Shown: piece by piece, positions 7,298 to 30,760 of the stretch | How the letters are laid out: each line of letters opens with the position of its first letter | How positions within the stretch are numbered: position 1 is the stretch's first letter | The notes under the pieces: generated by a model | What the model was told of the DNA's origin: nothing | Database searches by the model: none | The model's input: only the letters and a program-made list of their open reading frames with translations | NCBI RefSeq assembly: GCF_046119375.1 | Contig: NW_027362768.1 | Location: 157,914,001-157,978,000 of the forward strand | Length of the DNA stretch: 64,000 bases | Direction: 5' to 3' | Origin: Phyllobates terribilis | Taxonomy: Eukaryota | Position numbers and translations under genes: made by a program

Positions 7298-7428
7298 CTG
7301 GTGAAGGAATAAGTAGTACAGAACGTATAATGTATAGTGGATTGCAAAGTGGGCAGACATGTCAGGAGCTGAGCTGCTCCATAGCCAGGCGGTGCCGGCT
7401 GTGTAATACGACCGACACCTGCTGCTAT

Positions 7429-7597: not shown

Positions 7598-7714
7598 CAA
7601 TAGTAATGATGGGAACTTGCTGGCGCTGGTTGCGCCTGTGTGATAAGGAAATCATTAAATGTGATGTCGCAACACAACACTGTTTACTGCCATAACATTA
7701 CAGTCATGTACATA

Positions 7715-7717
<3 letters not shown>

Positions 7718-7745
<28 letters not shown>
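7718..7745. repeat. (TA)n microsatellite (shorter copy near 31181-31203)
   Basis: Direct observation. Confidence 0.95.
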
Positions 7746-7750
<5 letters not shown>

Positions 7751-7754
7751 ATAC

Positions 7755-8375: not shown

Positions 8376-11300
8376 TTAATGTATAACTATCGTTTCAGGA
8401 GAACTTGCAGCTTAATGTCAGTATCGGCCTCTCGCTCCTCCCCCTCCAGAGAATTTTATGAGCACCAACTGCCATCTCCTATCTCAGTAATGTGAAATTG
8501 GGAGTGAAAGATCAGTACAGGAGAAGAAAGGAAATCTATTAAAAGTTTTTCTTTTTCACTTTTAATAAATAAAATAATGTTTTATATCAAAAAGAAAAAA
8601 AAAGTCTTTGTTCCTCATACTGAACAATCACAGCCCAGCTTCCACGTTTTGGGTTCCATAGTAAAGACTATTATGATGCCAGGTTGTGACACTTATGCCA
8701 TTTCTATGACTATTTTGGTCAATTCCTCACCACCTGGTTTACTAAAAATGCCATCCCTCTATAGAGGGGAGTCCTGTATCAAACACCATACAACACCAAC
8801 GGAGATGAGATCAACCAGTTGTACCTGTTTATAATGGCCCCATTGCAGCCCATGGGCCACATCCATGGTGGATATAAAAGGGCATCACATTGGCTGCATC
8901 TATTGTAATGGTTAAAGGTCATTATTCAGACATAGAACTAACGACAGCAGATATAGTCATCATTTTTTATTATTTTCATTATTGGACCATTTCCTTTTAA
9001 TGATAATTCAACTTGTCAAATGGCTGTTTTGAAAATAACTAAAAGTACGCAGATTGTTTACATTTAAAAATTAATACTTGATTCCTATTGGCTGCTGGAA
9101 GTCCCTCCCATTTAGAATGCCCGAGTAGAACGCTCATAATCGTTGCTGCGGAAACAAATCGTTGATGCAGTGACGGCGGTTGGAGAGACAGCATCTCGTT
9201 TTGCGATTCCCCAAATTTTGCAAAATGTTTCGCATTTTATTTGAATTGTGTTCGAACGTCTTGAGATTTTCAGAAGGGCAGTACGTCATCACATCAGGTC
9301 AGATCTTTAGCAGCTTATGTACATTAAATGTAATATATTGGGAGAAGAAAAGCCACCCAAAACAGATTTTGTGTGGCCAGATGCCCTTCATGAACGGAGG
9401 CGGTTAGTGGATGTTGGAATCTCCTATCCAAAATTTGCACCATCATCTCCTAAAAAGTGTACAAAAACTACCCATGTTAATATATAGAGATGACCAGGCC
9501 TTCAAAAATCATAGGCATTGACTTTGTATGATCATCTCCATGGTCATGTAGGTTTCTTCCAGGTTCTTCAAATTCTACAACACAAAAATATCTTGGCCCA
9601 ATATGTCCGTGGAGACAGACATGCGGTGCGTCTTCTCAGACCGCAGCATGTCAATTTCTCTAGTCTCCACATGCGAAATTTTATCAGTGCAATGTATAGG
9701 ATGCGGTGAATCCGCATGTGTTCAATGAACAAATGCAGATTCACCTGCGTGCAGCGCTTTGGACGCAGCATAAAGTATACTGTGTTCAAAGAGCCGCCAG
9801 AAAGGACCGTGTGCACATACCCTTAGTATCATCCAAAATAGAAGAAGAAAACCGTTCTAGATATTCTAGTCTCGGATGGGAAGTTTGGTGGGATGATAAT
9901 GGAGTTTAGACGTCACCCTGAGCAGGACCCCCTGTACCCCTCTAACCTTCCAAATAAGCACAGTCTGTCTTCCTTAGAGCAGAGGATCTTCCTTCTTGCT
10001 TGGGTTGGTCTTAAACAGTCTTTAACTCCCACCATGTCTTCAGTTAGCCTTGGGCTCATGCACTCGGATGGTCACTCACTAGAGGCTTCTATGGGGTGAT
10101 CAGAGACTAGATACATATTCAGTTACCTACTCAAATTTATATATATATTTATTTTTTTTAAGGCACATGCTTTTTTTTTAAATTACTAATATATATAAAT
10201 ATATTAGTAATTTAATTTAAAAACAAAATTGGTGCCTTAAAAAATCCCAAATTTTGGTGCTCGTAATTTGTGCAATAAAATTAGAAACTTTGGAAAAGTT
10301 TGGAAAGCGTGTGCGGTGTTAACAGGGAGGGATGATGGCCACAATCAGATCAATATAGATCAAATATTCATTATGGTAGAAACTGGCACAAATAATACAG
10401 TGATTTCAATTTCTGTATTTAGAAGAAAATGTGAAATTTATTAAAGAGCGTGCGTCTTCTAATAAATTTGTGCATTTTCCTCCGCTGCACTTTGGTTTAA
10501 AATTGATGGATGAAACACAAGTCACAACAAGTCTCCCCAAAATACTTTCAGATACGTGATACCTGGTCACTTATAAACACAGTTTACATGGGAGGTGGAC
10601 TGGATGTGAAACAGTATCAGTCTTGTCAATAGCGCCATTCTTGTCAATAGGCTGGGTCTGGTATTGCAGCTCGGCCCCATTCCAGCTGGAAAAAATACAG
10701 GAACTATTCAGGATTTTCTTGCCCTCCAAACAACCACCACTGTCTGACAGTTCTGCTCTAGAACTTCCTAAAGTTCAGGAGGTTCATCCCTCTTCATTAT
10801 GGACTGAATGCACATAGGGCTACCCCTCTCCATAGGCCCCACAATAAGAGGGGAAGGTAAAGGCCCATGGGGCATTCTCTGTGGCCCACTTCTCTCTTCC
10901 CATTGGATGTAGCCAACAAATACCTGGTGTGAGCAGAGTGACTTATTCCTGGTGTATGTTCCTCCATAGATAATAACTGCAATATTAATTTCCGACAGGT
11001 TTGAATATAGACCTATCAGCTCTACTACCACCGATAAGACGTAGAAGACCAAGAATTAACGACCGGCAAAGAAGGATTTTCATCCAAAGAGTCCAGAGGG
11101 CCGGATACCGCGAGCTGGCAATGGGAGGATAAATGGTATGACACTGCCTTATAGGCACGTGCCCACCGACCCACACACGTGTATGTACATCCAAGCACCC
11201 AAAACATATCACAGAAAACTCCGGACCCTCTTACTAAGGAAAAAAAATCAGTCACGTAGATGATTATGTGACACTGCCACGTGGGCCACATCGATGCAAT

Positions 11301-11997
11301 CTTTGCATGCCCGGCTCATATTGCATCTCCCTAATGCACATTGAGCCATGCCAGCATTGTCTGAGCTAGGCCGCTCTTAAAGGGGTTGGCCATATACATC
11401 ACTGTATGATCAATGGGGATCAGAGTGCAGGGGTCCTCACCGATCACGAGAATAGGAGTCTCATAGTCCCCTGACGCCACTGCTTCACTCACTGTCCATG
11501 GGAGTGGTGGTCACATACGTGCAGTACTGCTCCCATAGAAGTGAATGGAGTGTACCATACATGTCTGATGGATCAGAATTCCACCTAAACGAGACGATCA
11601 AGAAAATCGAGCAGCCTTGCTGCTAGTTTTTGACTGCTGGACCAGAGCCCTGCAAATTTCTTCCTACCTTCCGATATTCTCGACACCTCTTCTGCTTTGT
11701 GCCACAACATCATAGCGTTGCAAGGCATACTAATCAGAAGAGGCACCGAGGATGTGAGCAGATAGGAGGAGGTTCTCCGGGCTCGGATCCAGTGACCATG
11801 GCTACTAATGTGGTCACTGGACCAGAGTCCTAATCTTTTAGCTCAATTATCACTTTAATAAATTAATTGAGACAAAAAATGTCCCTACTTGGATGACGGG
11901 AGACTCCACCAGCACATTGGGTGATAGAGACCTGGGGAGAAAGCGAGAGGTTCACCTTAAATAGTGTCAGAACGCTCCTAATTCTTTTCAACACAAC

Positions 11998-12003
11998 TTT
12001 ATT
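11998..12003 (-). terminator. Candidate AATAAA polyadenylation signal of DNAI3 copy II
   Basis: First AATAAA on the - strand, ~270 nt downstream of the TGA at 12275-12277. Confidence 0.5.
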
Positions 12004-12274: not shown

Positions 12275-15200
12275 TCACAGTTCTTTTTCATTCTCTTTCT
12301 TAATCCCCAGACCGATCAGCACAGAGCTCTCCAGGGCCAAGTATGTGCCATACTCTCGGCTTATCTCCTCCTCGAGCTGCTCCTTTGACTTCACCGGTGG
12401 AGAGATTTCCTAGACATAAATAGGACAGAGTTATACTCGACTTCCTTCTCTTATCCTATGTGATCACTCATGGATATAAAAACAAGTAGAAGTGACGGCA
12501 CAAAGTGCAAGAGCCGAGCAGTGTGGAGCGAGACACTTACGCTTTTCTTGCTGTGCTCCTTCAGCTCCAGCGTTCTCTTCTCTGCAGCCCGAAATGTCTT
12601 TCTCTGTTCATAATATTCCAAATGACTGACCTCCCTGTCCAAGTAATGCAGGACCGCGGTGCTCTGCAGAAGAGAAAGGAGAATATTGCTGCGGACATGT
12701 TCCCACAATTGCAGACGGGACAACCCATAGCGGATCTTACAATGCAAGCTGCCAATGCCACCGTTGCAAATTTCCTCATAGTGGTAGAAGAAGCCATTGG
12801 TCAGGAAAAACAAATTCACCAATTCAGCTGCAACCAGCAGCTTTAGCAGAGGACCTCAATTATGAAGTCCAGATATTAGACCCTTCCACTGTTCCCAGTT
12901 GTTGGGGTCAATACTACTTCTTCACTAACTCTACTAGTGCCCATGTTTCCCTGGCATGGTGCCATGGAGTCACAGCTGTCAACTGGACCTAAATGGTTTC
13001 AACCAAGGAGCCAGGGCCAAAGAGCCAGTTGTGAAACTGGGCACAGACACAAACATTTATGTCTATAGGATTTACCAATAGTATATGAGACTGTTGGTTT
13101 TCCTTGGGGCGGACAAGGACCCAACATGGTGGCCCTTTTCTTGTCCAAGCCTCTTATATTCCCTGGAAAGGCCCAGGAGGAATCAGGACTGATCAATATT
13201 TCTGACAGTCATTATATGTATATGGTAAAGCACCTAAAAGGCTTCAAAGGGGTTGTCAACCTTCAAGATTCCCTTTACCATAGAGGAACCTATGAAATTA
13301 CCCTGATTACATGGTGTCTTGCGATGCAAGCTGCCAATGCCACCACTGCAAATTTTCATGTAGGCCTGGTGGCGAATGGTAGAAGAAGCCATAGGTCAGG
13401 AAAAATGAATTCACCAATTCAGCTGCAACCAGTAGCTTTAGCAGAGGACCTCAATTATGGAGTCCAGACATTAGACCCCTCCACTGTTTCCAGTTCTTGG
13501 GCTCAATACTTCTTCACTTACTCTACTAGTGCCAATGTTTTCCTGGCATGGTGCCATCGAGTCACAGCAGCCAATTGGACCTAAATGGTTTCAACCAAAG
13601 AACCAGGGTAAAAGAGCCAGTTGTGAAGCTGGGCACAGACACAGACATTTATGTCTATAGGACTTACCAATAGTATATGAGACTCTTGGTTTTCCTTGGG
13701 GCAGATAAGGACCCAACATGGTGGCCCTTTTCTTGTCCAAGCCTCTTATATTCCCTGGAAAGGACCAGGAGGAATCAAGACTGATCAATATTTCTGACAG
13801 TCATTATATGTATATGGTAGAGTGCCTAAAAGGCTTCAAAGGGGTTGTCAACCTTCAAGAATCACTTTACCATAGAAGAACCTATGAAATGACCCTGATT
13901 ACATGGTGTCTTGCAATGCAAGCTGCCAATGCCACCGCTGCAAATTTTCATGTAGGCCTGGTGGCGAATGGTAGAAGAAGCCATTGGTCAGGAAAAACAA
14001 ATTCACCAAATCAGCTGCAACCAGCAGCTTTAGCAGAGGACCTCAATTATGGAGTCCAGACATTAGACCCTTCCACTGTTTCCAGTTGTTGGACTCAATA
14101 CTTCTTCACTTACTCTATTAGTGCCCATATTTTCCTGGCATGGTGCCATCGAGTCACAGCTGTCAACTGGACCTAAATGGTTTCAGCCAGAGTCAAAGAG
14201 CCAGTTGTGAAGCTGGGCACAGACACAGACATTTATGTCTATAGGATTTACCATTAGTATATGAGACTCTTGGTTTTCCTTGGGGCGGACAAGGACCCAA
14301 CATGGTGGCCCTTTTCTTGTCTAAGCCTTTTATAATCCCTGGAAAGGACCAGGAGGAATCACGACTGATCAATATTTCTGACAGTCATTATATGTATATG
14401 GTAAAGCACCTAAAAGGCTTCAAAGGGGTTGTCAACCTCAAGAATCCCTTTACCATAGAGGAACCTATGAAAATACCCTGATGACATGGTGTCCCATGCT
14501 CGGACCACTATTGATCAGTGGTAATTTGCAAAAACAATAAAACAAACCTTGCCGAATGTGTTAAACTCACTGCAGTGCCACCATAGGACAACATGAAGTA
14601 TCACTAGTAGTAGGTTCAGTCCTAACGCCAGCGTGTGTCAGTGCGCATGATACACGGGAACCATTTAAACTGGCACGTGAGGCTGGTATAGACACCGAAA
14701 AAGGGGTAAAAAATGGTTTGTCAAAGATTCTTGTTATTAAAGCATCTTCCCGAGTTACAGTAAATGTACGACCACAGAAAGATGCAAGAGTGAAATGTAA
14801 TAGAAGAAAAGCAAAGATTGTGCAAGTCTATAGGAGGCCGGAGCAAATCACATCGGCAGCAATAAAATAACACTTTCCTCGTTTATTAATGTGTTCAATA
14901 TATGAAGACTCTGTCCCCGAACCAACCTCATTAGCCGACGGGTGATGTAAGGTCCACGGGATCTGTAATACATGGAGGGTCCCGCTGTCATCGGCCACAG
15001 CCAGGAAATGCTGCTTTGCTGCAATAAATAAGATGTAATTCATTATTTTGAGTCTGTATCTGTTTTGGTCTCACAATATAATTCCTTATCCTTGGGCATG
15101 TGCGAGAAATCCTTGAAGAGGTTGTCTCACAAAAACAACCCCTGTTATGGCATATGGGCATTGTAGATGGGGGTCAACAAATGAGGGCAGCCCCCCCCCG

Positions 15201-18200
15201 TCTATGGGCCAAAATAGAGCTGATTTGTACAAGCAGCTTCCGCTCCGGCAGACCTGCGACTGCAAAGAAGTCACCGGTGTCGTCTGATCCGCTCATTTAT
15301 TACCCTCTGAAGTCTTCCCCCTTCTGTTTGTGAATGAGAAAGAAAAGGGGATAGATGAATAGATAGATGAGAGTGACACATGACTGCAGGATCAGACTAC
15401 ACATAGTTTACTTGTAGTCTGTAACCATGGAGACACATTGGTCTGCACTGCACCTGCATACACGAAAAGGCCATATCATCATCATTTTTGTATTATTTCA
15501 GCTGTTACCTGACATGATCCAGGGTTTAATGCAGGTGATGGCCGCTGCCGATATGTTCTGCGTCTGAGACGGCTCATGTGTCTTCTCCAGTAAGTCCCAG
15601 ATATCCACATTTCCATCTTCCTTGCCGATGAAGAAGACGCCGGGCCTGGACAGTGACCAGTGGGCTGTGGTGTACCTCTTCTGAGTGCAACACGACTGCA
15701 GGATCGGTCCGCTCTGCGAAAGAAAGATGCAATAAAAAAATGAAAATACAAAATAAAATGTTATATAAATATGAAAAAAGTTATTGCAGTGTCTATAACA
15801 AACATCCATTTTATTTTATGTTCATTAATATTCCAGAGCCCGTTCATCACGCCGTCCTACGTGTTTCCGAGAGATATGTCATTAGTCATGGCCTAAAATT
15901 ATCATACATGGTCAACACTGTTGAAAAAAAATGTCAGGGTTGCTGTTTTGTGTTCATTCCACCGTCCCAAAAAATTAAAAATGATCAAACACTTAAATGA
16001 AACCCAAGATGCTGCCGCAGGCTCTCGTTCACACGTCCGTTTACACTTTCCTTTTCTTTGCCCTGTTTTAAAGAACAGATAAATGGAATATATGTCCAAA
16101 ACGGATCCGCTGCATAACCGAGGCAAATGGAAGCACTGGGCCACGTTGGGTCGTATGGGGTCCATCTTGGTTTTTAAAATGTAAGAAAAAGAGCAGCGTG
16201 CAAAAAAAATTTTTTCTAAATACAGCACATAATAGAACTCAGACATACCCCCTAATAATCAATGCGGCCCCTCTGATTGCATTTCCATCAGTTATCCAGC
16301 AGATACATTTTGGACAAGAATTCTGCTATGGAGAGGAGCTCCGTCCACCATGATAATGTTGTGTTATTCCCTTCCTGCAGCAGGAGACCAAGGAGACATT
16401 TATTTCGGGGGTTTATAGGGCCCGAGAGTTATAGGGGCAGGACCTGCACTAGTTATGGATCCCGGGGTAGGTTCTGGGAGGAGCGCACTTCCCTGATCTC
16501 TTATATTATGTGATGGGGGTCCATCTGCCCAGAATAGTAATACTCACAGTGACTCCTTCCTTCCAGATAGCGAAGTTCCAGCCCCCGACGGTGAGTGCAA
16601 AGTCCTTCAGAAATGCAGATCTTTGCACAGTGTGGACCAGTCCATCATGGATGCCGTGTCTCTGCGAGGGTTTAGCACCTGCAAATACCAAAATTCAATC
16701 CACAGTCAGTGGATACACTGGAGATAATGCTATGGGAGACGCTACATGCCCTTCCAATAATTGTGCAGTTTATAAAATGTTGCTGCCATGTCCAGATGGT
16801 GAATTTACTTATAAAAAGACTATGATCCTGAAACTGCACTAAAAGTATATAACAAAGGTTCTAGACCCAAGAAAATGGAGGAGGGTCCAGGATGGGTCTA
16901 TGGACCACTGATGTATATAGTGTATATACAGACAACTCACTGATGTGTCTTCCAGTGTCTCCGTCCTTTTCCATCTTCCAGTCTGTGTACAGCAGCTCCC
17001 CGTCCTGTAGTAAGATGGACAGAGTGGACAATGGCGTGTTATATTGTCACTAATATATACACAAGACATATGGCCGCTCTCACCATTCCCAAAGTGCAGA
17101 TCCAGTGAATGTCAGATAAGATGACCATACAAGTTAGATGGCTGGCACCAATCAGCCATTCCTCTGACCCCTCAATACATAGCTGGGTTCAACAAAACAA
17201 TGGTATATCTCCAATGAGAACAAAGGTTCGGCCATGCTGGAGCCCATTGTACCTGATCCCTCTTCCCCCTACATCTGCCATTAGGAGAGAGTTCAAACCC
17301 CTCTCGATGGTCGGCCGGTGACTTCAGCCGACGTTCGTCTCATGTGTGTACTGCACCTTTATAAATGATCTGAGGGGATTAATCAGTATTATATTCCCTG
17401 AAATGCTGGTTATCACAGTTCCCCAACCAGTGGCTCAGGGGCCACGTGTGTCTCTTGGGTCCCTGGCATGTGGCTCTTTAAGAAACAATCGTATCAGTGT
17501 CAAAACCATATCACTTGTAGTATAGCTGAAAAGTGACAAAAAACGCACAATAGGACATCACCCGGGCAATAAATGCTGTAGATAGTCTGGTATTGCTCAC
17601 CAGGCTGGGTTGTATCAGGCACAACTCCTATGCAGGTATAGAAATCAGCTGCGCCGTATACCGGAATAAAACCAGCAGTAAATGCAATAGTAGAGAGGGA
17701 TATACGGATAATTCTGCTACTGGTCAAGAAGATATCCAATGGCGATGATGGTGTTGAACAAAGAGCAGTTTTATTAACCAACGCGTTTCAGTCATTGCAG
17801 TCATTGTGTTTTTCTCCTGATGAAGGAGTTTGTTCAACTCTGAAATGCGTTAATTAATAAAACGGCTCTTTGCTCAACACCATCATCTCCATTGGATATC
17901 TTCTTGATCAGCAGCAGAATTATCCGTATATCCCTTTCTACTATATAAATAATTGTCCACTTTTACGATTTACACTGTGTTCCAAATTATTATGCAAATA
18001 ATATTTTCTCAGATTTTCCCAAATTACCTGGGAATTGCAGTCATTGTAATTTTCCAGTCAAATAACTATTAGAGTACAATTGAAAGGTTTTTGTACAAAC
18101 TGCCTATGATAACAGTATATTTTTAAAAACATAAAAAACTCAAACTGCACTCAAAATGCATTATCATGCATGAAAATGATCTTGCTGCGGAATGCACGGT

Positions 18201-21200
18201 TCTTCTTCTTGAACCATGGAAGGAAGTGCTGTTTGAGAAACTTTAAAGCTGCATGGATCTCTCACTCATTGCTTGAGTATTGTGTCTAGCTGTTAGCCTA
18301 GTTTCCAGTCTCCAAGCTCCTGACCATTCTTACCTAGATTGTTCTCACCTATCTACGGATTGTTTCCTACAACTCCTTTTTGCTAACTACAAGAACTTTT
18401 ACTAACGCTTGCTGTTCCTGCTTGGGCTCCTTTGGCCACTGGTTTTCAGCAGTACAAGGCCAGTAGTATAACATTTGCTGACATTTACCAAGCGCTACCG
18501 TCTGTATCTCAAAGATGGAAGCACTCACTTCAGTTCCGGCAAAATAACTGGTGTTGACGTCCTCCAGAATTTTGCTGTTCTTGGCCGAGGCCGCTCTTAA
18601 ACTGCTGTAATGAATGGATCCCTCGGATTTCTCCTCTTTGATCGGAGTCTGTAGTTTATCTACACACGATAGAGAGAAAGGAGAGAATAAGTAATATTAC
18701 AGATGTGCTATGAATATATATGGCTGTGTAAGCCCAGAGCGATCTGTCAGACCCATACAGCCAGGAATCATTATGTCCAAGAGGCCACCTCACCGGCAGA
18801 GTATGGGGCGCTGGTGGTGGCAGCAATGGTCCTGGGAGATCACCATCGCTCACTATAGATCTTCCTCGCCTTAAGCCTTTCTTAAGAACATATCACACTG
18901 AATCCTCCAAGACAATGGATGTCCTGTCTTTAGGAGCGGCCGTCACTGTTTGATCAGTGGGGGTCGCCCTATCTTATGGAGATACCTGACATCAGGGATC
19001 CCGTGCAGAGCCCTGTCCAGAATACAGGGAGGTGCACATGCCAACCTCCGCTCCATTCATTGCCTATGGGACTAGTAGAGAAGGAAGAGTACATCGCTCG
19101 GCTATTTCCATCAGTCCCACTGACGTCCTGCTTAGGGATGTCCTCCATGCTTGATTATCTATGAAGGAATGTCGTTTTCTGACCAGGCCACTGCTTGCCC
19201 AGAATAGATCCTTTCCTCATCCTTTATCTTTTTCACCGAGGATGTATTATCACAAATCTAAGGAACGGTGGTTCCTGCGAGGACGGCCAGCATCCTGCTA
19301 TTAAAGGCGGCAGACTGGATCAGTGTCACATGAAGAAGCTGTGAGTTCCTGTATGTGATATCCTGAGGTTTCGGCGCTGAATGACCACGTGACGGCATTA
19401 GACTCAGGAGGAGAATGGCGTGTGCCAGGGAAACGTTGGCCGCGGCTCTGGAATGCCCGAGTCTGGCTGTAAAACAAGCCTGAGGCTTCCGCATTCCCCC
19501 CTGGGAAGTGTAGACCCCATTGTCCTCATAGGAGCGCGGTCCGGGGATACAACGCAGGACTGCAGGAACAGGAGCCGGCTGTGGGGGCAGAGGCCTCGCT
19601 GTCTGTGGGCCCCAATAATAGGGCCACAAAATGTAACCTCCCAGCATATATAAGCTAGGGTGATAAAACAGTGACCTATACTACAGTAAACTCAGGAATG
19701 GACGATACAATGGGCAGAAGGGGCAACTCCACTGGGGCACTGCAATTTAAAGGGGTATTATTACCACCCACTTTGCAATACAAAATGTAATGTCCCTGCT
19801 TGCTCATATGCCAACATGGCATCCAGAAAACACAGCAATCTTCTCCCTGTGCGGAGTCACATATCTGTAGCGTCATTCTAACATCTTAGATGTCTTATAG
19901 GGAAAGTAAAGGAGGAACTGCGGATGCTCATCCTACATAAAGATGGATAGGAGAGAACGTATCTACTGACAACAGTCCTTACACAATGGCTTGTACTGTT
20001 TAGCACAGTATGGCGGTATTATTACATTTGGAACAGTATGGCGGTATTATTACATTTGGCACTGTATGGCAGCATCATTATATTTGACACTGTATGGCAG
20101 TATTAATATATTTGGCATTGTATGGTGGTATTATATTTGGCACTGTTTGATGGAATTATTACACTTGACACTGGCGGAATTATTATATTTGGCATTGTAT
20201 GGTGGCATTATTATATTTGGCACTATGGTAGTATTATTATATTTGGCACTGTATGGTAGTATTATTATATTTGGCACTGTATAGTGGCATTATTATATTT
20301 GCCACTATGGTAGTACTATTATATCTGGCACTGTATGGTAGAATTATTATATTTTTAACTGTATGATGGCATTATTATATTTGGCATTATGGTAGTATTA
20401 TTATATTTGGCATTATGGTAGTATTATTATATTTGGCAGTGTATGGTAGTAGTATTATTATATTTGACACTATGGTAGTATTCTTATATTTGGCACTGTA
20501 TGGTGGCATTATTATATTTGGCATTGTATAGTGGTATTATATTTGGCACTGTTTGATGGCATTATTACATTTGACACTGACGGAATTATTATATTTGCCA
20601 CAGTATGGTGCCATTATTATATATGGCACTATGGTAGTATTATTATATTTGACACTGTATGGTGGATTATATTTAGAACTATATGGTAGTGTTATATTTG
20701 GCAGTGTATGGTGTCATTATTATATTTGGCATTGTATGGTGGTATCATATTTGGCACTGTATGGCGGTATTATTATATTTGGCACAGTGTGGCACTTATT
20801 TGGATTGTATTGTGACTATTAGTGGCTACTTCTCTCCTTACAAAACATGGCAGTAGTCTCCACAGATCCTGCCCTGGACTATATGATATTTCCCAAGTAT
20901 TCTGCTCAGAGACTGCGTCACTCGTAAATCATGGAGTACTCGAGTCACATCATGTGCCCGGCCATCCATCGAGGTGGGATCCACCTGAGAGAGCACAGAG
21001 CTGGTCTTACCTGCCGTCCTGCAGTGATGATGCTCATCTCTAAGGCTGATTTTGATGGGGCTGAACTCTCCTCCTGTCTCAATCTTTGGAATTGAAGTCT
21101 TAAAATAGAAAGAAATAACAGCAAATGATTGTTAGAAGTACAAAACTGCAAAATTCCTTATAAAAGATGAAGCTTCAAACCACGCACAGCTATTGTTATA

Positions 21201-24200
21201 AAATCTGTCTAACTAAAGCCACCACTAGAGGGAGCTCAAGAGATCAGATAATACTGTATATACATTGAACTGAACAAAAAGTCAGTATACAGTGAGCACA
21301 GAAGCCCCCCCCCCTAGTGGGAGTAGCAGATAATCACAATGCTGTCATATAATTGCAGGGCACTAGAAGCTATACACAAAAATAAGAGCACCGATTCATA
21401 TAAAGTTTTTGCAGAAATTAAAAATGTTAAACCATCAAATGAGATGGTGTTAAAAGGCAGATATTACCTTCAATGCACGAAAATAAAAAGTTTGGTCACT
21501 TTGTATGTACATTTTATTATTTATCTTACACTAATGTTAAGTTATAGTGCTGGATTCACAATTCTGTAGCTTTCAGAGCTGAAATCTCCCAGCATGCCCC
21601 AGGATAGTAATTTCCATTCACAGTAATGCCTATTTACACCAGGTGATGTATAACAATCTAATGTGGAAACAGCTATCACTGCATCACAGCAGCTCGGCTT
21701 GTTGACCGTTTACAGTATGAACCAACAGAATTATGAATGCAGCTCTGGAGAATAAGGCTGTGTGCACACATTGAATATTTACAGCAGATTCTTCTGCAGC
21801 AAAAACAGTAAAATACACGTCTGTGATGCCTGTCTGCAATTAAAAAAATGTTGCATTAAGTTTCCTGCCAGGGAAGTAAATGAGGGGGAAATGCTATATA
21901 TTTTTTTTTTGCATCCAGAATAAGTGACAGCGACCAGACATGACGGAGAAAGTGCCGGAGCCGCTCTAATAGGACAATAATCCCGGCCGGGGATTATCCG
22001 CAGATCCTTCTTCCAGTCATCTCTGGATCGGCTTTTCTTCTTTCTTCATAATCTAATACAAGCACCAAAATGACAGCTGTAGCATCAGATATTGTTATTT
22101 AGAGGATGCATGTATATACTGGTGTATGTGGGGGCAGAAATGTATATATGTGAAGGGGAACCACCGTTATAGGAACAGATATCCCAAATTCATGGAAGCA
22201 TTGGCCCCCTACTTGTCAGGCACCAGCAGCACTATACGGACAATGCCGGTACTTTCGGGTGGATATGCTCTGGCCTGAGCTTACAGGATAAATCTGAACA
22301 GGGCCCTGTAGGTACACGGCTTCTGGAGTATTAACAATAGGTAGAGAAGCATTGGTACAAGCATGGGCTCTAAATGCACCCGCTAGGCCAGCTGCAAACC
22401 TATCACTGTGCAAAAGCCATAACTTAAGGCCACGGCCCCGCTATCAGTATTTGGTCAGTATTTGGTCAGTATTTTTTCTCCGGAGTGGGAGCCAAAACCA
22501 GGTGAGGAACAATCAGAGAAAAGGTATAATAGAAACAAGTCACCAATTCTGCATTTATCACCCACTCCTGGTTTTGGCTCCCACTCCTGAGAAAAAAATA
22601 CTGACCGAATACTGATAGTGGGGCTGTGGACTAAGAGGAGTTTTCTGCTTTCAGTAAACCCCTGGATGCAATTTGTTTTAAAATATCAAACTGATCTTTT
22701 CTCACCCTCCTCGGGTCCAGCGCTGATATCATCTTGCCACCACTGCAGGTAATCACCCTCTGAGAGGCTTATGCTATCAACTCGGGAAGAGCCGCTGAGC
22801 TCAGTGATTGGCTGCAGCGCTGACGATGTTATGTTGGCGCTGGGAGCAGCGGCAAAGATTCAGTGCTGGACCTGATGAGCTGGATAAATACCCTTTAAAA
22901 TTGTTCTTGTTTCTGCCCATTTTTCCCGCTGTGCTCGGAATATGACTGATGATTTCTCATACAATCTTCTCTGGCTTACTGCTGTTCTGTAAAACAGTCT
23001 GTGTCGCACAGGGAGGCAGTGTACTGTATAGCACTTATAGAATAACCTGTAGTCACACTGAAATGGCGGTGGCCGGGACAGGAAGGCAAGTGTCTGCCAG
23101 CGAGAAGCAGAGAAATACTAAGGGATTAGGATGGAGTTACTGTAGCCATAAAGGTGCCCAGGTATCTGCAGAGCAGCTGACAGCCATTTCTTCCAGACCC
23201 CGTACACCTGTGCTTCAGGGGGGAGAGTCGGGGGTCTCCATACAGGTTTGGATGACTTTCTCTAATGAGCATGGAGGCCCATGGGCCCATAATGTGACCA
23301 ACAAGCAGTTAGTTAAGTTGGATCTTGTATCCTGATGGATCTGCACCTTGAGTAGTGGCCTCCAGATTAGATCGAGGTGTTTGAAGGTATCCGGCACCCC
23401 GAGAGGAGCCGAGTGCTGGTTCTCCTCTTGTTTTCTGCTTGTCGGCGTCTGTAGATGAGTCTTGTGTGAGCGAATGTCCCAGAACATCACAGAACTGTAG
23501 AGGAGAAATGAGATTGTGTCAAAGGAAATCCAACCAACTATTCATATGAGATGAGAAATCAATAGCAATCTCCAGAATATGTGCGTCATGATGATTTGTC
23601 ACTAAGATTCTGCAATCTGCCCAGGAAATAACATCCGACAGAACGTGAGAGAATGAACGCTGGAGTGGACTTGGCGTTTTATGTCTGTGGTGTCTGAGCT
23701 CGTACTTATGCAGAAGCTGGTGGTCACCTCTGCGTGCTGAGAGATTATTGAGGGTCTCAGGACATTTAAAAAAAAAATGTAGGTAGACTTTAGGATGACC
23801 ATACACATGAGATGAATCTTGGCCAAACCAATGTGTCTTTGAAAACTCTGGATCGCAGCATGATGTCTAGCTTTTGAGGATCTTTTGGTCTACTTCACTT
23901 TGTCAGGCAGGTCCTGGTTAAGTGATTTCTTGATTGAGAACAGGTGTGGCAGTGATCAGGCCTGTGTGTGGCTAGGGAAATTGAACTCAGCTTCCCAAAA
24001 ATGTGATATACCACTATTAATTTATGTTTTAAGGGAGGGGGGCAATCACTTTTTCACACAGGACCCTGTAAGTTTGGATTTCTTTTTCCCTTAATAATAA
24101 AGACCTTCATTCAAAAACTGCATTTTGTGTTTACTTTTGTTATCTTTGTCTAATATTTAAATTTGTTTTGTGCTCTGAAACATTTAAGTGCGAAAAACAT

Positions 24201-27200
24201 GCAAAAGAATAAGAAATCAGGAAGGGGGCAAACACTTTTCACACCAATGTATATCATGCTTCCTACAATCAGACGTCTCACTATAAGGCCAAATTCAGAC
24301 GTCCATATATCATGTTCCAAGTAAGGACCACGATGCACGGAGCGCCTGCAGGGGTGGACTTTTATTTGTAATAAAGGATTTTATTCAGGTTTATTACAAT
24401 ATGACTATGGGGTTAGTAATGGGGGCGTCTTATAGACACCCTCCATTACTAACCTGGGCTTCATGTCAGCTGCCAATACAAGGCTGACATGAACCCCAAC
24501 CCTATTACCCCACTGCCACTGCACCAGGGCAAGTGGGAAGAGCGGAGGCTAAGCGCCAGAGTTGGCGCATCTTATTGATGCGCTATTTCTGGGGCCACTG
24601 AGGGCTGATCTCATTAGCCTCGGAAGGGGCCAGTATCCAAGGCCCCTTCCCTGGCTAGTAACATCAGCCCCCCGCGGTCAGCTTTCCCTCTGCTGGTTAT
24701 GAAAATGATGAGGGAGCCCACACCATTATTTTTAATTTAATTCTTCATTTTACACTGGATGTGGACAGCGGGTGCTGAATACAACTCCCATCATTGTCTC
24801 CGAGATCAGCGCGAGCAGGGGACAATGATGAGAGCTGCCTCCAGCAGCCGATGCAGGGGATCAGCGTGAACTGTACTGCTGATTCCCAGACGCCGGTACG
24901 TGTCACGCTGATAACACACGTATGTCATCTGTGTGTCATCTGTGTGCACGTGTGCAGCATGCATTTTGTCAGTGCTGCACCAAAAAACCTGTCATGTCTG
25001 CGGGTTTCTCACATGGACACACAGCCCGTGTGACAAACCTGACATCTGCGCACACCCACTGAATACAATGGTTGTGGGTATGTCCGTATTTGGGCCCTTT
25101 AAAAACGGACAGCATACGGACATACAAAACAGACCTGTGAATAGGGCCTTACAACGTGTAAAAGTAACCGCGTCGTCTGGAAATCATCAGGACAGGATTT
25201 TAGCCTTTGAGTTTGATTCCAGAAAAGTCTCAGTAAATCACAGGTTATGCGGCTTTTACAGAAACTCATTGTTTTCCAATATGGAAAAAAGTTGTGAGAG
25301 TTTTTGCAACTTTCCGAAACTTCTGAATAGAGAATATGCCAAATTGTCCAGCCATGAAGCCCGCTCTCCTGTATCAGCAGGCAGATTGTTGTTGGGGCGT
25401 ATAGTAATTGGATGATGATTACTGTTATGGCAGCAAGATTTATTGTCACCCGGATTTCCAGAAATGATCGGTGCTATTGCTACATCATAAGTGAAAAGAA
25501 CAACTCAATGACTTTTACTACAAGGAAGATCCAGAGCATCGTCTAATGGAAACCCGGAAAAGAAAAGTCACTCCACATACCAGTCAGGAGAACACGTGGC
25601 GAGCTGGACGCAGTAACCGCTTTTATTCTCATAAGGATATCCAGTCCGAGTTATCTGAAAAGTAAAAATCACACAAACAAATATGGATTTATTATAAAAT
25701 ATTGTTTGTATGAACGTGGGGTTACATGGCATTAAATCTCATAAAGGCCTAAAACGTGGAATGGATGGAGACAATTTTCTAAATACATTACTCATGCTGA
25801 TCCTGAGTTACATCCTGTATTATACTCCAGAGCTGCACTCACTATTCTGCTGGTGCAGTCACTGTGTACATACATTACATTACTTATCCTGTACTGATCC
25901 TGAGTTACATCCTGTATTATACTCCAGAGCTGCACTCACTATTCTGCTGGTGGAGTCACTGTGTACATACATTACATTACTTATCCTGTACTGATCCTGA
26001 GTTACATCCTGTATTATACTGCAGAGCTGCACTCACTATTCTGCTGGTGCAGTCACTGTGTACATACATTACATTACTTATCCTGTACTGATCCTGAGTT
26101 ACATCCTGTATTATACTGCAGAGCTGCACTCACTATTCTGCTGGTGCAGTTACTGTGTACATACATTACATTACTGATCCTGTACTGATCCTGAGTTACA
26201 TCCTGTATTATACTCCAGAGCTGCACTCACTATTCTGCTGGTGCAGTCACTGTGTACATACATTACATTAGTGATCTTGAGTTACATCCTGTATTATACT
26301 CCAGAGTTGCACTCACTATTCTTCTGGTGCAGTCACTGTGTACATACATTACATTACTGATCCTGTACTGATCCTGAGTTACATCCTGTATTATACTCCA
26401 GAGCTGCATTCAATATTCTGCTGGTGCAGTCACTGTGTACATACATTACATTACTGATCCTGCGTTACATCCTGTATTATACTCCAGAGCTGCACTCACT
26501 ATTCTTCTGGTGCAGTCACTGTGTACATACATTACATTACTGATCCTGTACTGATCCTGAGTTACATCCTGTATTATACTCCAGAGCTGCATTCAATATT
26601 CTGCTGGTGCAGTCATTGTATCTATATAAAATGCATCCGTAATTTACATGTCACATTTTGTAGATTTTTGAAGATAAATGAATCTATGAGATGTAAATAG
26701 TGACATAAAATTGTAGAACAGTGATCTGAGTCGCTCCTCCTGTTGGACTCGCTGAGTGTCTCTTCCTTATGACACATCATGGCGGCGGTACATCTGCCAA
26801 TATTCTGCATAGGAATCTGACACATCACAAGTCCTCTCATGCCGGACTTTTCCTCCCGATGTTCTGGACTTCGTCAGAGGAGTTTTTGAAAGAAAAAAAA
26901 AACATAAATAAAATAATTGGTGGCCAAATCTCGCCTCAAAGTAGTCCGGGAGCCAGTGTAAGTCAGTGATCACCTCCCGGTGGCCGTGCTCTATAGAGGA
27001 CACTGCGCAGTATCTCACCAGCGGAGAATCATGGGATTGCTTCACTTCCAGAGGAGTCTGTAGAAAGAAAAACAGCAATGTACCAGGCGGTAATAATATT
27101 ACCAGTAATACACCAGGCGGTAATATCAACAGTAATACACCAGGCGGTAATAACATTACCAGTAATACACCAGGCGGTAATAATATTACCAGTAATACAT

Positions 27201-30200
27201 CAGGCGGTAATAATATTACCAGTAATACACCAGGCGGTAATAATATTACCAGTAATACACCAGGCGGTAATAATATTACCAGTAATACACCAGGCGGTAA
27301 TATTACCAGGAATACACCAGGCGGTAATAATATTACCAGTAATACACCAGGCGGTAATAATATTACCAGTAATACACCAGACGGTAATAATATTACCAGT
27401 AATACACCAGGCGGTAATAATATTACCAGTAATACACCAGGCGGTAATATTACCAGGAATACACCAGGCGGTAATAATATTACCAGTAATACACCAGGCG
27501 GTAATAATATTACCAGTAATACACCAGGCGGTAATAACATTACCAGTAATACACCAGGCGGCAATAATATTACCAGTAATACACCAGGCGGTAATATTAC
27601 CAGTAATACACCAGGCGGTAATATTACCAGTAATACACCAGGCGGTAATAATATTACCAGTAATACACCAGGCGGTAATATTACCAGTAATACACCAGGC
27701 GGTAATAATATTACCAGTAATACACCAGGCGGTAATAATATTACCAGTAATACACCAGGCGGTAATATTACCAGTAATACACCAGGCGGTAATAACATTA
27801 CCAGTAATACACCAGGCGGTAATAATATTACCAGTAATACACCAGGCGGTAATATCAACAGTAATACACCAGGCGGTAATAATATTACCAGTAATACACC
27901 AGACGGTAATAATATTACCAGTAATACACCAGGCGGTAATAATATTACCAGTAATACACCAGGCGGTAATATCAACAGTAATACACCAGGCGGTAATAAT
28001 ATTACCAGTAATACACCAGACGGTAATAATATTACCAGTAATACACCAGGCGGTAATAATATTACCAGTAATACACCAGGCGGTAATATTACCAGGAATA
28101 CACCAGGCGGTAATAATATTACCAGTAATACACCAGGCGGTAATATTACCAGTAATACACCAGACGGTAATAATATTACCAGTAATACACCAGGCGGTAA
28201 TAATATTACCAGTAATACACCAGGCGGTAATAACATTACCAGTAATACACCAGGCGGCAATAATATTACCAGTAATACACCAGGCGGTAATAATATTACC
28301 AGTAATACACCAGGCGGTAATATTACCAGTAATACACCAGGCGGTAAAAATATTACCAGTAATACACCAGGCGGTAATAATATTACCAGTAATACACCAG
28401 GCGGTAATATTACCAGTAATACACCAGGCGGTAATAATATTACCAGTAATACACCAGGCGGTAATAATATTACCAGTAATACACCAGGCGGTAATATTAC
28501 CAGTAATACACCAGGCGGTAATAATATTACCAGTAATACACCAGGCGGTAATATTACCAGTAATGCACCAGGCGGTAATAACATTACCAGTAATACACCA
28601 GGCGGTAATAATATTACCAGTAATACACCAGGTGGTAATAATATTACCAGTAATACACCAGGCGGTAATATTACCAGTAATACACCAGGCGGTAATAACA
28701 TTACCAGTAATACACCAGGCGGTAATAATATTACCAGTAATACACCAGGCGGTAATATCAACATCAATATCAATATTCCAACCTTGGATGGAAAACACAA
28801 CGTCAAGATCCTTGAACATCCGATCTGCCTTTTGTTAAGCGTTATTTCACACTTTTGAGCTCCAGGGACCTTCTGCTCCAAAAACGCCTCAAAATAAATC
28901 AGTGTCATCGTACCCTAAAGACCCCCATACATTTTAGACTCACGGCAGCCGAACCCTCAGATATCAGCAGGGTCGTCCGACATTAGTTTAATGTGAATAG
29001 GAGCCTCCCGACTCTCCCCGACACATCATGTTCGGAGACAGAAGGGTCCAACATGTTCGATTGTTGCCTCTGAGATAAGCCACATCCTTAGGACTGACAG
29101 TGGCTCCTTCATGGAGGAGAGTTCAGATGACAGCTATCTATCGTGTACACTGGCCACTTATGTGGCACCCCAGAGGGTCTGGTTGCCACAGTGATAGTAA
29201 TGCCATGTCTGGGAGCAAAACAGGAGTTTCCTGGTTAGGGAACACTCTACCTGCAACACCTCCTGCTGCAGACCAGAAAAGGGGAGGATCCTGCCCTTTA
29301 TTACTGGATCTGGAGGCGGGGTTAGCCAGTCTAGTGACAGGAGTCAAGCAGGACACACTAAGGAGCAAGGAGCTGAGGACTGGAGCTGGCAGAGCTCGTC
29401 CTAGCCGGAGTAGATACAGAGTTGTGGACACCGGAGTCCGAGGCTGTGGGACCCTTCAGGCCCAGCAGCAGATACCACAGGGCAGGGGATTTCAGGTCTC
29501 CTGGCCCAACAGAAGCCCGGAGGCTCAGCCACAAGAAAGGACCAGTACCATCACAGAGGAGCGAGGAATACACGGGATCCGAGTCGCCAGCCATACGGGT
29601 GAGCACCGCACGTCACACTCAGGGACGTGGGCTACAACACGACTATAAGCGAGATAGCCAAAGAGTAGAGTCAGAACGGCAGGCCTACAACTCCACCTGG
29701 CCAGGGGAATTCCAGGACTGCTCCCAGACTGACCAGGCCCTCATCCATAGCAAGTACTCCCGTTGGGGTCTATATAATTACCACCAGTAATGACCCTAGG
29801 ACCGCACTGCAAAGACTCTGTGTTATTATTACTGATCCAGGCACTATCACCATCATCATCCATACACGCTGCCCTGAAGCTCCACTCTTCCTGTGGGGAG
29901 TTACATCACCTTGCTGCCCATACCATCAGCTTCAGTGGACTGCTCCGCAGCGGCGGTTCCCAATAACCGCATCCCACAGGTGGCGTAGTCGGACTATATA
30001 TAGCCTATACACATAGACTAGCCTGGTTTGACCGCCCTGGGTCACAGACCGGGTCGCCGCCACGGTGACTACAACCCCCAGCATCTACAAGGTCCGGCTC
30101 CGGGTACCCCCCATGGCCCAGGGGGCGCATAACATACAGAAAAAGTCAGCCGATATAGTGGAATTTAGAAGTTTGGCCGATCAATTATAAAAAACGATTA

Positions 30201-30760
30201 TTCACGGTTGTCGACAGGTAACTTCCATTTGCCAAAAGTGTGATCTGTCAGTTTGGGTGCTTTTTAGGCCGTTGTTGGTGACATTAATGATGTGTATTAT
30301 GGCACGAGCGTTAATAATAATAATTTTTATTTATATAGTGCCAACATATTCCGCAGCACTTTACAATTAAATTAGAACGTTGATCATTTGCTGCTATGAT
30401 ACAAGTGATCAGTTTGTTTCGCCTCATGTACAGCAGACCCTTCCCTTTAATAATCCACCTTCTGTAATGTTCCCAGTACCTGACCGTTCATACATCCTGC
30501 AGCGATAATATTGGGGTCACTTGGGCAGAACTGGAAGCAATAAATGTCATCTGGGCATTCGAGCATCAGCTGGAGAGAATAAGAGAAAAAGTCACCATGA
30601 GACGGGATCGCAGCAGAATTCAGGAGCCCCAGGACCTGCGGATGGATGGGGTCATTCAGGCTCCAAATGAGAATCAGCGATGGCGTCAAGATGAGTTTAA
30701 AAGAAGCGTTGACTCGATCCTCCAGCGACAGCCGTTCTGTGAGCGAGACTGCGACCAAAC
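12275..30760 (-). CDS. DNAI3: DNAI3/WDR63 5'-truncated duplicate, copy II: 13 exons, 508 codons open to the natural stop
   Basis: Exons 30636-30760, 30480-30569, 26935-27057, 25581-25654, 23347-23494, 21011-21098 ([29 protein letters not shown]), 18529-18659 (DKLQTP...SYFAGTE), 16941-17004 ([21 protein letters not shown]), 16548-16678 ([20 protein letters not shown]...WKEGVT), 15509-15713 (SGPILQSCC...KPWIMS), 14927-15018 ([15 protein letters not shown]...ANE), 12541-12663 ([12 protein letters not shown]...), 12275-12409 ([11 protein letters not shown]...EKEL*). Total 1529 nt, all phases compatible. Functional status unknown. Confidence 0.92.
12740..14495. repeat. ~3 tandem copies of a ~592-bp unit inside a DNAI3 intron
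   Basis: atgcaagctgccaatgcc at ~12746, 13323, 13915; atggtggccc at 13126, 13718, 14301. Units are visibly diverged from one another. Confidence 0.93.
17520..17944. mobile_element. Penelope-like terminal-repeat relic in inverted arrangement with a degenerate hammerhead motif
   Basis: ~105-bp inverted arms (17687-17791 / 17840-17944); CTGATGA at 17817-17823, stem GGAGTT/AACTCT, GAAA-TGCGTT at 17842-17851. Left boundary approximate. Confidence 0.55.
17973..18242 (-). mobile_element. Deleted Tc1 fragment (TIR plus part of the DDE transposase), only in copy II
   Basis: ta|cactgtgttccaaattattatgca terminus; the - strand encodes FLKQHFLPWFKKKNRAFRSKIIFMHDNA, a Tc1-type second-Asp motif. Confidence 0.7.
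20010..20800. repeat. Degenerate ~27-28-bp minisatellite (tggcactgtatggtggcattattatatt)
   Basis: Direct tandem repetition; ~380 bp longer than the paralogous array near 46250. Confidence 0.9.
22428..22631. mobile_element. MITE, paralogue of 874-1087
   Basis: Same TIRs and TAA flanks, more diverged. Confidence 0.75.
23895..24249. mobile_element. Tc1-like terminal fragment, paralogue of 2330-2685
   Basis: Same terminus ...cacaccaatg|ta. Confidence 0.6.
24287..25148. mobile_element. Harbinger-like element, paralogue of 2723-3574
   Basis: Same TIRs and TAA/TTA flanks. Confidence 0.6.
25794..26619. repeat. ~97-bp minisatellite, ~8.5-9 units
   Basis: Same unit as 4221-4668, higher copy number. 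Confidence 0.95.
27079..28765. repeat. 27/30-bp minisatellite expanded to ~58 units
   Basis: Same unit as 5130-5300; it generates the artefactual 539-713 aa repetitive ORFs. Confidence 0.97.
29161..30131. mobile_element. Solo LTR, paralogue of 5698-6668
   Basis: Same termini; TSD ACTTA/ACATA (one substitution). Confidence 0.75.
30312..30368 (-). mobile_element. L2-like 3' tail relic, paralogue of 6849-6905
   Basis: Identical sequence at +23463. Confidence 0.7.

What the first reader, a model, noticed from the sequence alone, without database searches (positions are those of the whole stretch)
12275..30760. Tandem array of headless DNAI3 copies whose remaining reading frames are intact
Seen: at least three tandem copies; copy II keeps 13 exons with correct splice sites and phases and 508 open codons to the natural stop, although its central introns differ from the other copies by several percent. 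No exon upstream of LVAVS... could be found in copies II or III. Known: DNAI3/WDR63 is normally a single-copy intermediate chain of inner-arm dynein f (I1), and this part encodes the WD40 region. Inference: these are either young pseudogenes or a source of N-terminally truncated WD40-only products (first in-frame ATG is in the second exon, about 466 aa), possibly in sperm or cilia.
Basis: partly seen in the sequence, partly recalled or inferred. Interest (0 to 1): 0.72.

Follow-up and report, generated by a model that had tools for sequence, protein, structure and literature searches.

The report
Headless tandem DNAI3 gene fragments, frog
Downstream of its intact ciliary dynein gene DNAI3, the golden poison frog carries a tandem row of young partial copies that lack the first 397 codons and one conserved exon; they are most likely non-functional duplicates, and RefSeq already lists them as "DNAI3-like" genes.

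Summary
On the minus strand the window carries three tandem partial copies of DNAI3 in Phyllobates terribilis. Copy II (30760-12275) has 13 exons and 508 open codons plus the natural stop. Eleven introns are GT-AG and one is GC-AG. No DNAI3 head exon lies anywhere in the 64 kb.

Four points are new:
- RefSeq already models the array: a full-length parent upstream (966/931 aa) and four headless "DNAI3-like" genes of 369, 369, 523 and 491 aa. They match copies I, II and III exactly; IV lies outside the window.
- Copies II and III lack a conserved 26-codon exon that encodes the WD strand VVLWDIS. A 30-nt minisatellite sits in its place.
- The ~3.1-kb RNA contigs of three runs carry the parental variants, that exon and about 1.25 kb of head sequence. 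None supports RefSeq's extra first exon.
- The copies carry replacements at sites invariant across frogs, and copy IV is decaying. Derived states are shared between parent and copies in a mosaic, which suggests gene conversion.

pN/pS of about 0.2 is confounded by that exchange. The copies are most likely young unprocessed pseudogenes. A truncated WD40 product is not excluded.

The parts
12275..30760 (-). Copy II. Exons: E1 30760-30636, E2 30569-30480, E4 27057-26935, E5 25654-25581, E6 23494-23347, E7 21098-21011, E8 18659-18529, E9 17004-16941, E10 16678-16548, E11 15713-15509, E12 15018-14927, E13 12663-12541, E14 12409-12275 (stop at 12277-12275). Ancestral exon E3 is missing.
   Evidence: The joined model translates to 508 codons plus stop. 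RefSeq XP_073498740 (P0277, 369 aa) matches it exactly from the ATG at 23487.
35735..63591 (-). Copy I, the part inside the window. Exons: E5 63591-63518, E6 61435-61288, E7 46964-46877, E8 44904-44774, E9 43207-43144, E10 40135-40005, E11 39170-38966, E12 38479-38388, E13 36123-36001, E14 35869-35735.
   Evidence: RefSeq XP_073499670 (P0270, 369 aa) matches exactly from 61428 to 35738. All splice sites are GT-AG.
1778..11710 (-). Copy III, 5' part. RefSeq first coding exon 11710-11666, then E1 7297-7173, E2 7106-7017, E4 5106-4984, E5 4080-4007, E6 1925-1778. The rest lies before the window start.
   Evidence: RefSeq XP_073501351 (P0164, 523 aa) matches exactly at residues 1-201. Its CDS range is 40.5 kb and starts 565 nt after the end of copy II.
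28780..28890 (-). Remnant of ancestral exon E3 in copy II. It holds the homologue of the parent's isoform-X1 extension (EFLEQK...CFPSK) and the first codon(s) of E3, then runs into the minisatellite. The copy III equivalent is 5427-5317.
   Evidence: tblastn of parent residues 468-504, 94.6% identity. Sequence reading. The alignment shows VVLWDISAYYELLSAKTAVTKNTASK present in the parent and all outgroups and absent from II, III and IV.
27082..28757 (.). 30-nt minisatellite where E3 and its intron should be. Copy II has 57.5 units; copy III has 5.5 units at 5131-5294.
   Evidence: Tandem Repeats Finder. The open frame 28914-26770 runs through the array in phase with the E3 acceptor and E4.
35126..35170 (-). 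Copy II equivalent of RefSeq's copy III first exon. It reads ATG ACG TTG... where copy III reads ATG ATG TTG. The GT donor is conserved.
11998..12003 (-). AATAAA poly(A) signal after the copy II stop. The homologous site of copy I is about 35463-35458.
   Evidence: RNA contigs laid on this stretch end at 11982-11992.
48501..54771 (-). Ty3/gypsy chromovirus-type LTR retrotransposon in the E6-E7 intron of copy I. It belongs to the 11.8-kb stretch 47709-59511 that copy II lacks.
   Evidence: The LTR pair 48501-49468 / 53804-54771 is 98.45% identical. Pfam finds RT, RNase H, integrase and chromodomain in the 1030-aa ORF 52530-49438, plus gag.
40334..43072 (-). 2.7-kb insertion in the E9-E10 intron of copy I, holding a non-LTR reverse-transcriptase fragment.
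   Evidence: Gap in the self-comparison. RVT_1 at E 3e-36 in ORF 43234-41306.

Best explanation
This is a young, Phyllobates-lineage tandem array of 3'-partial segmental duplicates of DNAI3. The intact parent gene lies upstream on the minus strand, beyond the window's end, and four headless copies follow it. Copies I, II and III lie partly or wholly in the window. The array grew in at least two steps (inferred). An older duplication gave two unit types that now differ by about 3% outside exons. A roughly 59.5-kb two-unit block was then duplicated, leaving about 1% divergence. An 11.7-kb tract has been homogenised to 99.3%. Each copy starts inside the first WD blade. It lacks the promoter, the first 397 codons (the DNAI3_N region) and, in copies II, III and IV, the 26-codon exon that carries the WD strand VVLWDIS. 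The remaining frames stay open because the copies are young. They also exchange sequence with each other and with the selected parent through gene conversion or unequal crossing-over (inferred from the mosaic of derived states). The copies are most likely untranslated, unprocessed pseudogenes that the automatic annotation calls protein-coding.
For: The species and the RefSeq models come from exact peptide matches. The gene layout is parent, 369, 369, 523 and 491 aa on one 399-Mb chromosome. All five frog sequences form one clade (100/98), with parent+II against I+III+IV. Derived states form a mosaic: parent and II share A (E8) and H (E9); parent and I share I (E6); I, III and IV share S (E7) and N (E8); I, II and III share T (E11). 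Changes private to the copies hit sites invariant in nine other frogs: S>F in E1, G>A in AGGC, A>T in RYTAAHW. Copy IV adds P>A, I>N, E>K and G>R, a partial E4 and intron read-through. Exon E3 is lost. No head exon is present. In the RNA contigs of three runs, 7237 reads G (the parental Ser codon, where the copies have Phe). The 1255+2 nt between E2 and E14 equal the 1179 nt of E4-E13 plus the 78-nt E3. About 1.25 kb of further 5' sequence follows in the contigs. Depth over 11451-11850 is close to zero in all three runs (at most 0.96 per 200-nt bin). In the youngest tract, exons are no more conserved than non-exon sequence (5/686 against 13/3912).
Against: No stop codon or frameshift occurs in 1191 + 560 compared exon bases, although the non-exon indel rate predicts about 2.5 indel events between I and II (P = 0.08). 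pN/pS is 0.23 for I against II (Nd 5, Sd 6; Fisher p = 0.017), and II against III shows 0 replacement and 2 silent changes. Exons E4-E6 differ far less than the DNA around them (2/345 against about 3.4%). RefSeq models every copy as coding and gives copy III a new first exon with an ATG. The mouse WDR63 deltaN construct, which lacks residues 1-397 as these copies do, still binds WDR78, so a headless product could be active (PMC8593051). The RNA evidence consists of assembled contigs of unknown tissue, which drop rare variants.
Confidence: 0.7

Rival explanations
1. At least one copy is a working gene. The best candidate is copy III, the RefSeq 523-aa model. It would be transcribed from a new promoter and first exon and translated into a WD40-only protein that binds DNAI4/WDR78 and modulates, or competes in, assembly of inner-arm dynein I1 in sperm or cilia.
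For: The frames are open and the splice sites intact. pN/pS is about 0.2 and exons E4-E6 are more conserved than their introns. An in-frame ATG-bearing exon with a GT donor lies 4.4 kb upstream of E1 in both copies II and III. The parental poly(A) signal is retained. Mouse WDR63 lacking residues 1-397 still co-precipitates WDR78 (PMC8593051).
Against: No RNA contig covers the new exon in three runs, and the only DNAI3-type contigs are parental. The copies start after the strand TISCISWH of the first blade and lack the VVLWD strand of the next repeat, so the propeller would be incomplete (the model has low confidence). Replacements sit at invariant sites and copy IV is decaying. The apparent constraint is what exchange with the selected parent would also produce.
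Confidence: 0.12
2. The copies make no protein but still matter. They would act as donors and acceptors in gene conversion with the parent gene, having already passed replacements into it, or as substrates for copy-number change by unequal crossing-over.
For: The parent carries three derived replacements at positions conserved in the other frogs: T>I in PDTFKH, T>A in RATSAKN and L>H in GRLIS. Each is shared with only some copies. One 11.7-kb tract is 99.3% identical inside units that otherwise differ by about 3%.
Against: The states shared by parent and II are explained equally well by the later block duplication, without any transfer into the parent. The direction of transfer cannot be read without the parent's DNA, which the tools could not deliver.
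Confidence: 0.1
3. The array is an assembly artefact: haplotypes or reads of a single locus were laid out falsely in tandem.
For: Two long tracts are 99.0-99.3% identical. I could not measure read depth against a single-copy baseline.
Against: The window has no N. The units differ by 3% in substitutions. They also differ by an 11.8-kb stretch with an LTR element, a 2.7-kb LINE insertion and a ten-fold difference in minisatellite length. Five ordered copies cannot be two haplotypes. The expressed parent differs from every copy in the window at 7237. DNA contigs of another study's sample show further variants of the same stretch, in two paths of unequal depth (34.1 against 13.1 over E14); this last point is weak.
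Confidence: 0.05

Closest known systems
DNAI3 / WDR63 / Chlamydomonas IC140, the intermediate chain of inner-arm dynein I1/f
   Same: The exons are orthologous in sequence to residues 398-966 of the frog's own DNAI3 and to the WD40 and C-terminal coiled region of human DNAI3.
   Different: The copies have no N-terminal DNAI3_N region (397 residues), no strand TISCISWH of the first blade and no VVLWDIS exon. No transcript was seen.
Unprocessed (duplicated) pseudogenes and partial gene duplicates in tandem segmental duplications, for example CYP21A1P beside CYP21A2 (from general knowledge)
   Same: They retain introns, lie head to tail next to the parent, are truncated at the duplication breakpoint and show signs of gene conversion with the parent.
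   Different: No stop codon or frameshift has appeared yet in copies I-III. The automatic annotation calls them coding.
Mouse WDR63 deltaN construct, residues 398-923 (PMC8593051)
   Same: It has almost the same N-terminal boundary as the frog copies. That construct keeps binding to WDR78.
   Different: It is an engineered cDNA with a complete WD domain, not a natural locus that lacks one WD-strand exon.

Membership tests
DNAI3 / IC140 (functional intermediate chain) | Sequence homology of the WD40 and C-terminal region | tested here: met
   PDB 8j07_k1 at E 1.4e-32 for one exon. 95-100% identity to the frog's own DNAI3 exon by exon.
DNAI3 / IC140 (functional intermediate chain) | N-terminal DNAI3_N region (Pfam PF27785), about 397 residues | tested here: not met
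   No head exon in 64 kb (best E 0.13). PF27785 is listed for full-length proteins but not for the 523-aa and 491-aa models.
DNAI3 / IC140 (functional intermediate chain) | Complete WD40 propeller | tested here: inconclusive
   The strand TISCISWH (upstream exon) and the strand VVLWD (E3) are absent from copies II and III. Strand positions come from an AlphaFold model of the parent with a mean pLDDT of only 44, and 50-75 in this part.
DNAI3 / IC140 (functional intermediate chain) | Transcribed and spliced mRNA | tested here: inconclusive
   Only parental-type contigs appear in three RNA runs, and depth is near zero (at most 0.96) over the alternative first exon. Contigs cannot show absence.
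Unprocessed partial-duplicate pseudogene | Introns retained, in tandem and in the same orientation as the parent | tested here: met
   Exon-intron structure. Gene order from RefSeq CDS ranges.
Unprocessed partial-duplicate pseudogene | Truncated relative to the parent (promoter and 5' exons missing) | tested here: met
Unprocessed partial-duplicate pseudogene | Disabling lesions in the retained part | tested here: inconclusive
   Copies I-III have no stop or frameshift. II, III and IV have lost an exon in frame. Copy IV has a partial E4 and needs intron read-through to stay open.
Unprocessed partial-duplicate pseudogene | Neutral evolution (dN/dS near 1, exon divergence equal to intron divergence) | tested here: inconclusive
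   pN/pS is 0.23 from 11 changes. Exon divergence is below intron divergence in one segment and equal in two others. The test is confounded by exchange with the parent.
Assembly false duplication | Near-identical copies next to gaps, no structural differences | tested here: not met
   No N, 0.3-3.4% divergence, and unit-specific TE insertions and repeat lengths.

The most novel reading that the evidence does not exclude
Copy III-type loci have gained a promoter and a 15-codon first exon. In testis they would produce a deltaN-like WD40 protein that binds DNAI4 as the mouse deltaN construct does, and so tune or poison assembly of I1 dynein. That would make a lineage-specific, gene-fragment-derived regulator of sperm or ciliary motility.
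Probability: 0.08. Interest if true: 0.6.

Novelty: new member of a known kind. Interest (0 to 1): 0.27.

Why it matters
The practical value is for annotation. Four "DNAI3-like" protein-coding models in the RefSeq annotation of P. terribilis are probably gene fragments, and anyone counting dynein genes or paralogues in dendrobatids should know this. The locus is also a clean, datable example of how a tandem array grows in a giant frog genome. It shows an older duplication, TE insertion, duplication of a two-unit block, a conversion tract and a ten-fold change in minisatellite length. It would gain interest if the copies proved to be expressed, because a natural version of the mouse WDR63 deltaN construct could compete for DNAI4. 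It would also gain interest if the copies proved to feed replacements into the functional gene.

Tried and rejected
- Genomic DNA of the parent gene and of copies III and IV was requested through the look-up of encoding contigs. Only gene layouts came back, because the sample file is too large. Silent changes could therefore not be polarised and conversion tracts with the parent could not be mapped.
- The Dendrobates tinctorius locus was not on record. Absence of the array in sister genera rests only on the protein lists and the tree.
- All sequencing runs offered were Logan contigs, not raw reads. Expression level, transcript starts and rare copy-derived transcripts could not be assessed.
- I first read the X5 DNA table as three haplotypes over E14. 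On re-reading it shows two paths (34.1 and 13.1), so I dropped that claim.
- The AlphaFold model of the parent was poor (mean pLDDT 44). I used it only for strand positions and ran no fold search.
- I considered that the 30-nt minisatellite arose from exon E3 itself, because TGG.ATATT follows the E3 acceptor and the translated unit loosely resembles the exon. Without the parent's E3 DNA this stays a guess.
- The pooled exon-versus-intron test (expected 25, observed 11) was rejected as biased, because the exons sit disproportionately in the low-divergence tract. Summed segment by segment, the expectation is about 17.7 against 11 observed.
- A literature search found no paper on DNAI3/WDR63 duplication in frogs.
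- The joined 13-exon model was used only inside scripts, for translation and counting. Database searches used one exon by reference or database proteins.
Full report
**What is there.**
A self-comparison of the window shows a head-to-tail repeat with units of about 21.5-23.5 kb. One unit is stretched to 38 kb.
- 788-4668 matches 22342-26253 at 95.0%.
- 5122-16876 matches 28588-40334 at 99.3%.
- 16869-21831 matches 43072-47709 at 91-97.6%.
- 1-4489 matches 59511-64000 at 99.0%. This reveals a higher-order period of 59.5 kb.

The window contains no N. The coding exons lie on the minus strand. One of them, 15713-15510, matches residues 705-772 of human DNAI3 in the solved axoneme structure 8j07 at E 1.4e-32. 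The next hits are bovine WDR63 and Chlamydomonas IC140.

**Whose genome, and what is already annotated.**
An exhaustive search with that single exon returned a full-length bullfrog DNAI3. A word search with that protein, followed by cluster look-ups, returned five Phyllobates terribilis RefSeq proteins. All sit on one 399-Mb chromosome of assembly GCA_046119375.1.
- Full-length "DNAI3-like" X1 and X2: 966 and 931 aa.
- Truncated "DNAI3-like" proteins: 369, 369, 523 and 491 aa.

Exact peptide mapping places three of them in the window.
- XP_073499670 (369 aa) is copy I, 61428 to 35738.
- XP_073498740 (369 aa) is copy II from the ATG in the MFWDIR exon, 23487 to 12278.
- The first 201 residues of XP_073501351 (523 aa) are copy III. 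Its 15-codon first exon is at 11710-11666.

The CDS ranges give the order parent, I, II, III, IV, with nothing further within 10 kb downstream. Earlier scan notes place the parent's ATG exon about 38 kb beyond the window's end.

Copy II has 13 exons totalling 1529 nt, which gives 508 codons plus TGA and no internal stop. All acceptors are AG. Eleven donors are GT and the donor after E4 is GC, as it also is in copy III. All exons of copies I and III inside the window are equally intact.

tblastn with residues 1-397 of the frog's own full-length protein finds nothing in the 64 kb (best E 0.13, low-complexity). The tail gives 27 hits.

The parent and every other frog read ...CMNGQ | VVLWDISAYYELLSAKTAVTKNTASK | TPLEVKQ.... 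Copies II, III and IV go straight from CMNGQ to TPLEVKQ.

The DNA shows what happened. The sequence just upstream of that exon survives at 28890-28780 in copy II and 5427-5317 in copy III. After the first codon or two of the exon comes a 30-nt minisatellite. It has 57.5 units in copy II and 5.5 units in copy III, although the surrounding DNA of the two copies is 99.3% identical.

The lost exon is 78 nt, so the frame is kept. It encodes the strand that ends in the WD dipeptide of that repeat. This follows from the WD-repeat signature AGGCxNGQVVLWD. A low-confidence AlphaFold model of the parent places strands at 459-464 and 469-473.

The copies also begin after the strand TISCISWH (residues 384-391), which pairs with LVAVSLTE. 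Any product would therefore lack two strands of the propeller as well as the whole N-terminal region.

**Expression.**
Three runs guessed to be RNA and one DNA run of another study were laid on 6451-12450. All are assembled contigs. Each RNA run has one contig of 2.8-3.2 kb with these features.
- It covers E2 and E1 with the 66-nt intron removed.
- It runs on for about 1.25 kb beyond E1, as measured in the two longer contigs. That is head sequence absent from the window.
- It reappears on the last exon and a 290-nt 3' UTR, ending 10-20 nt after an AATAAA at 12003.
- Between E2 and the last exon it holds 1255 nt, plus 2 nt that fit either side.

Exons E4-E13 sum to 1179 nt, so the contigs contain exactly 78 nt more, the exon that the copies lack. 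At 7237 all three runs read G, the parent's Ser codon, where the copies have the Phe codon. These contigs are therefore the parent's mRNA, in the X2 form.

RNA depth over 11451-11850 is close to zero in all three runs (at most 0.96 per 200-nt bin). This region includes RefSeq's first exon of copy III. That gives no support for transcription of the copies. It does not prove absence, because contigs drop rare variants and the tissues are unknown.

**Sequence evolution.**
Non-exon substitution divergence between copies I and II is 3.4%, 2.8% and 0.33% in the three homologous segments. Poorly aligned and tandem-repeat stretches were skipped.

| Segment | Exons | Exon differences | Non-exon divergence |
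|---|---|---|---|
| 1 | E5-E6 | 1/222 | 3.4% |
| 2 | E7-E9 | 5/283 | 2.8% |
| 3 | E10-E14 | 5/686 | 0.33% |

Summed segment by segment, about 17.7 exon changes are expected and 11 are seen. The Nei-Gojobori counts are as follows.
- I against II: 5 replacement and 6 silent changes, pN/pS 0.23, Fisher p = 0.017.
- II against III: 0 replacement and 2 silent changes.

This mild signal of constraint cannot be credited to the copies. The tree groups parent with II, and I with III and IV, so one side of every comparison was the selected parent for most of the time.

The derived states are also shared in a mosaic.
- Parent and II share A in E8 and H in E9.
- Parent and I share I in E6.
- I, III and IV share S in E7 and N in E8.
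- I, II and III share T in E11, where the parent, IV and all outgroups have A.

That pattern points to repeated exchange among the units. In the youngest tract, exons are no better conserved than the DNA around them.

Changes private to the copies fall on sites invariant in the nine other frogs aligned: S>F, G>A in AGGC, T>S and A>T. Copy IV has four more replacements and a partial E4, and needs 68 intron-encoded residues to stay open.

**History (inferred).**
All five sequences share Phyllobates-specific residues and form one clade (100/98). The array therefore arose after the split from Dendrobates, Ranitomeya and Anomaloglossus.

The 3% divergence between unit types, the 1.55% divergence between the LTRs of the chromovirus in copy I's intron, the 1% divergence at the 59.5-kb period and the 0.3-0.7% divergence in the homogenised tract suggest this order:
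1. A first duplication.
2. TE insertions.
3. Duplication of a two-unit block.
4. Gene conversion.

**Comparison with what is known.**
These are partial, intron-bearing duplicates next to their parent. That is the classic unprocessed pseudogene situation. They fail the membership test for a functional DNAI3 on the N-terminal region.

Mouse WDR63 lacking residues 1-397, almost the same boundary, still co-precipitates WDR78 (PMC8593051). I found no paper on such duplicates in frogs. RefSeq's automatic models already list them.

**Verdict.**
The locus is best read as a young array of non-functional gene fragments (confidence 0.7). An expressed WD40-only product remains a minority possibility.

The joined exon model was used only inside scripts and was not sent to any search tool.

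Noticed in passing
window 48501-54771 (minus): A chromovirus-type Ty3/gypsy LTR retrotransposon. Its LTRs are 98.45% identical. An uninterrupted 1030-aa pol ORF holds RT, RNase H, integrase and chromodomain, and gag ORFs are present. It sits in the E6-E7 intron of copy I. An earlier scan note (s1-237650) concerns its primer-binding site.
   Followed up: partly
window 27082-28757 and 5131-5294: A 30-nt minisatellite has 57.5 units in one copy and 5.5 units in the other, although the flanks are 99.3% identical. In copy II a 715-codon open frame (28914-26770) runs through it in phase with the E3 acceptor and E4. If that acceptor were used, the exon would encode about 560 residues of LLPPGVLLVI repeats.
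   Followed up: partly
window 4221-4668, 25797-26619, 63635-64000: A 97-nt tandem repeat in the E4-E5 intron. It has 4.7 units in one copy and 8.7 in another.
   Followed up: no
window 26934-26933 and 4983-4982 (minus): The intron after E4 has a GC donor (GAG|GCGAG) in both copies II and III. It is presumably a natural GC-AG intron inherited from the parent.
   Followed up: no
parent gene, outside the window (proteins P0278, P0276): RefSeq isoforms X1 and X2 differ by a 35-residue, non-conserved 5' extension of exon E3 (EFLEQK...CFPSK). The RNA contigs fit X2. The extension looks like an alternative acceptor or an annotation choice.
   Followed up: partly
parent protein P0278 against other frogs: The functional parent carries three derived replacements at positions conserved in the other frogs: PDT>PDI, RAT>RAA and GRL>GRH. 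Each is shared with some headless copies. Transfer from the copies into the parent is possible.
   Followed up: partly
window 41306-43234 and 56655-57206 (minus): Reverse-transcriptase fragments of non-LTR type lie in introns of copy I. The first ORF runs on from exon E9.
   Followed up: no
window 19999-20792: A degenerate 28-nt tandem repeat of about 30 units lies in the E7-E8 intron of copy II. It aligns poorly with copy I.
   Followed up: no
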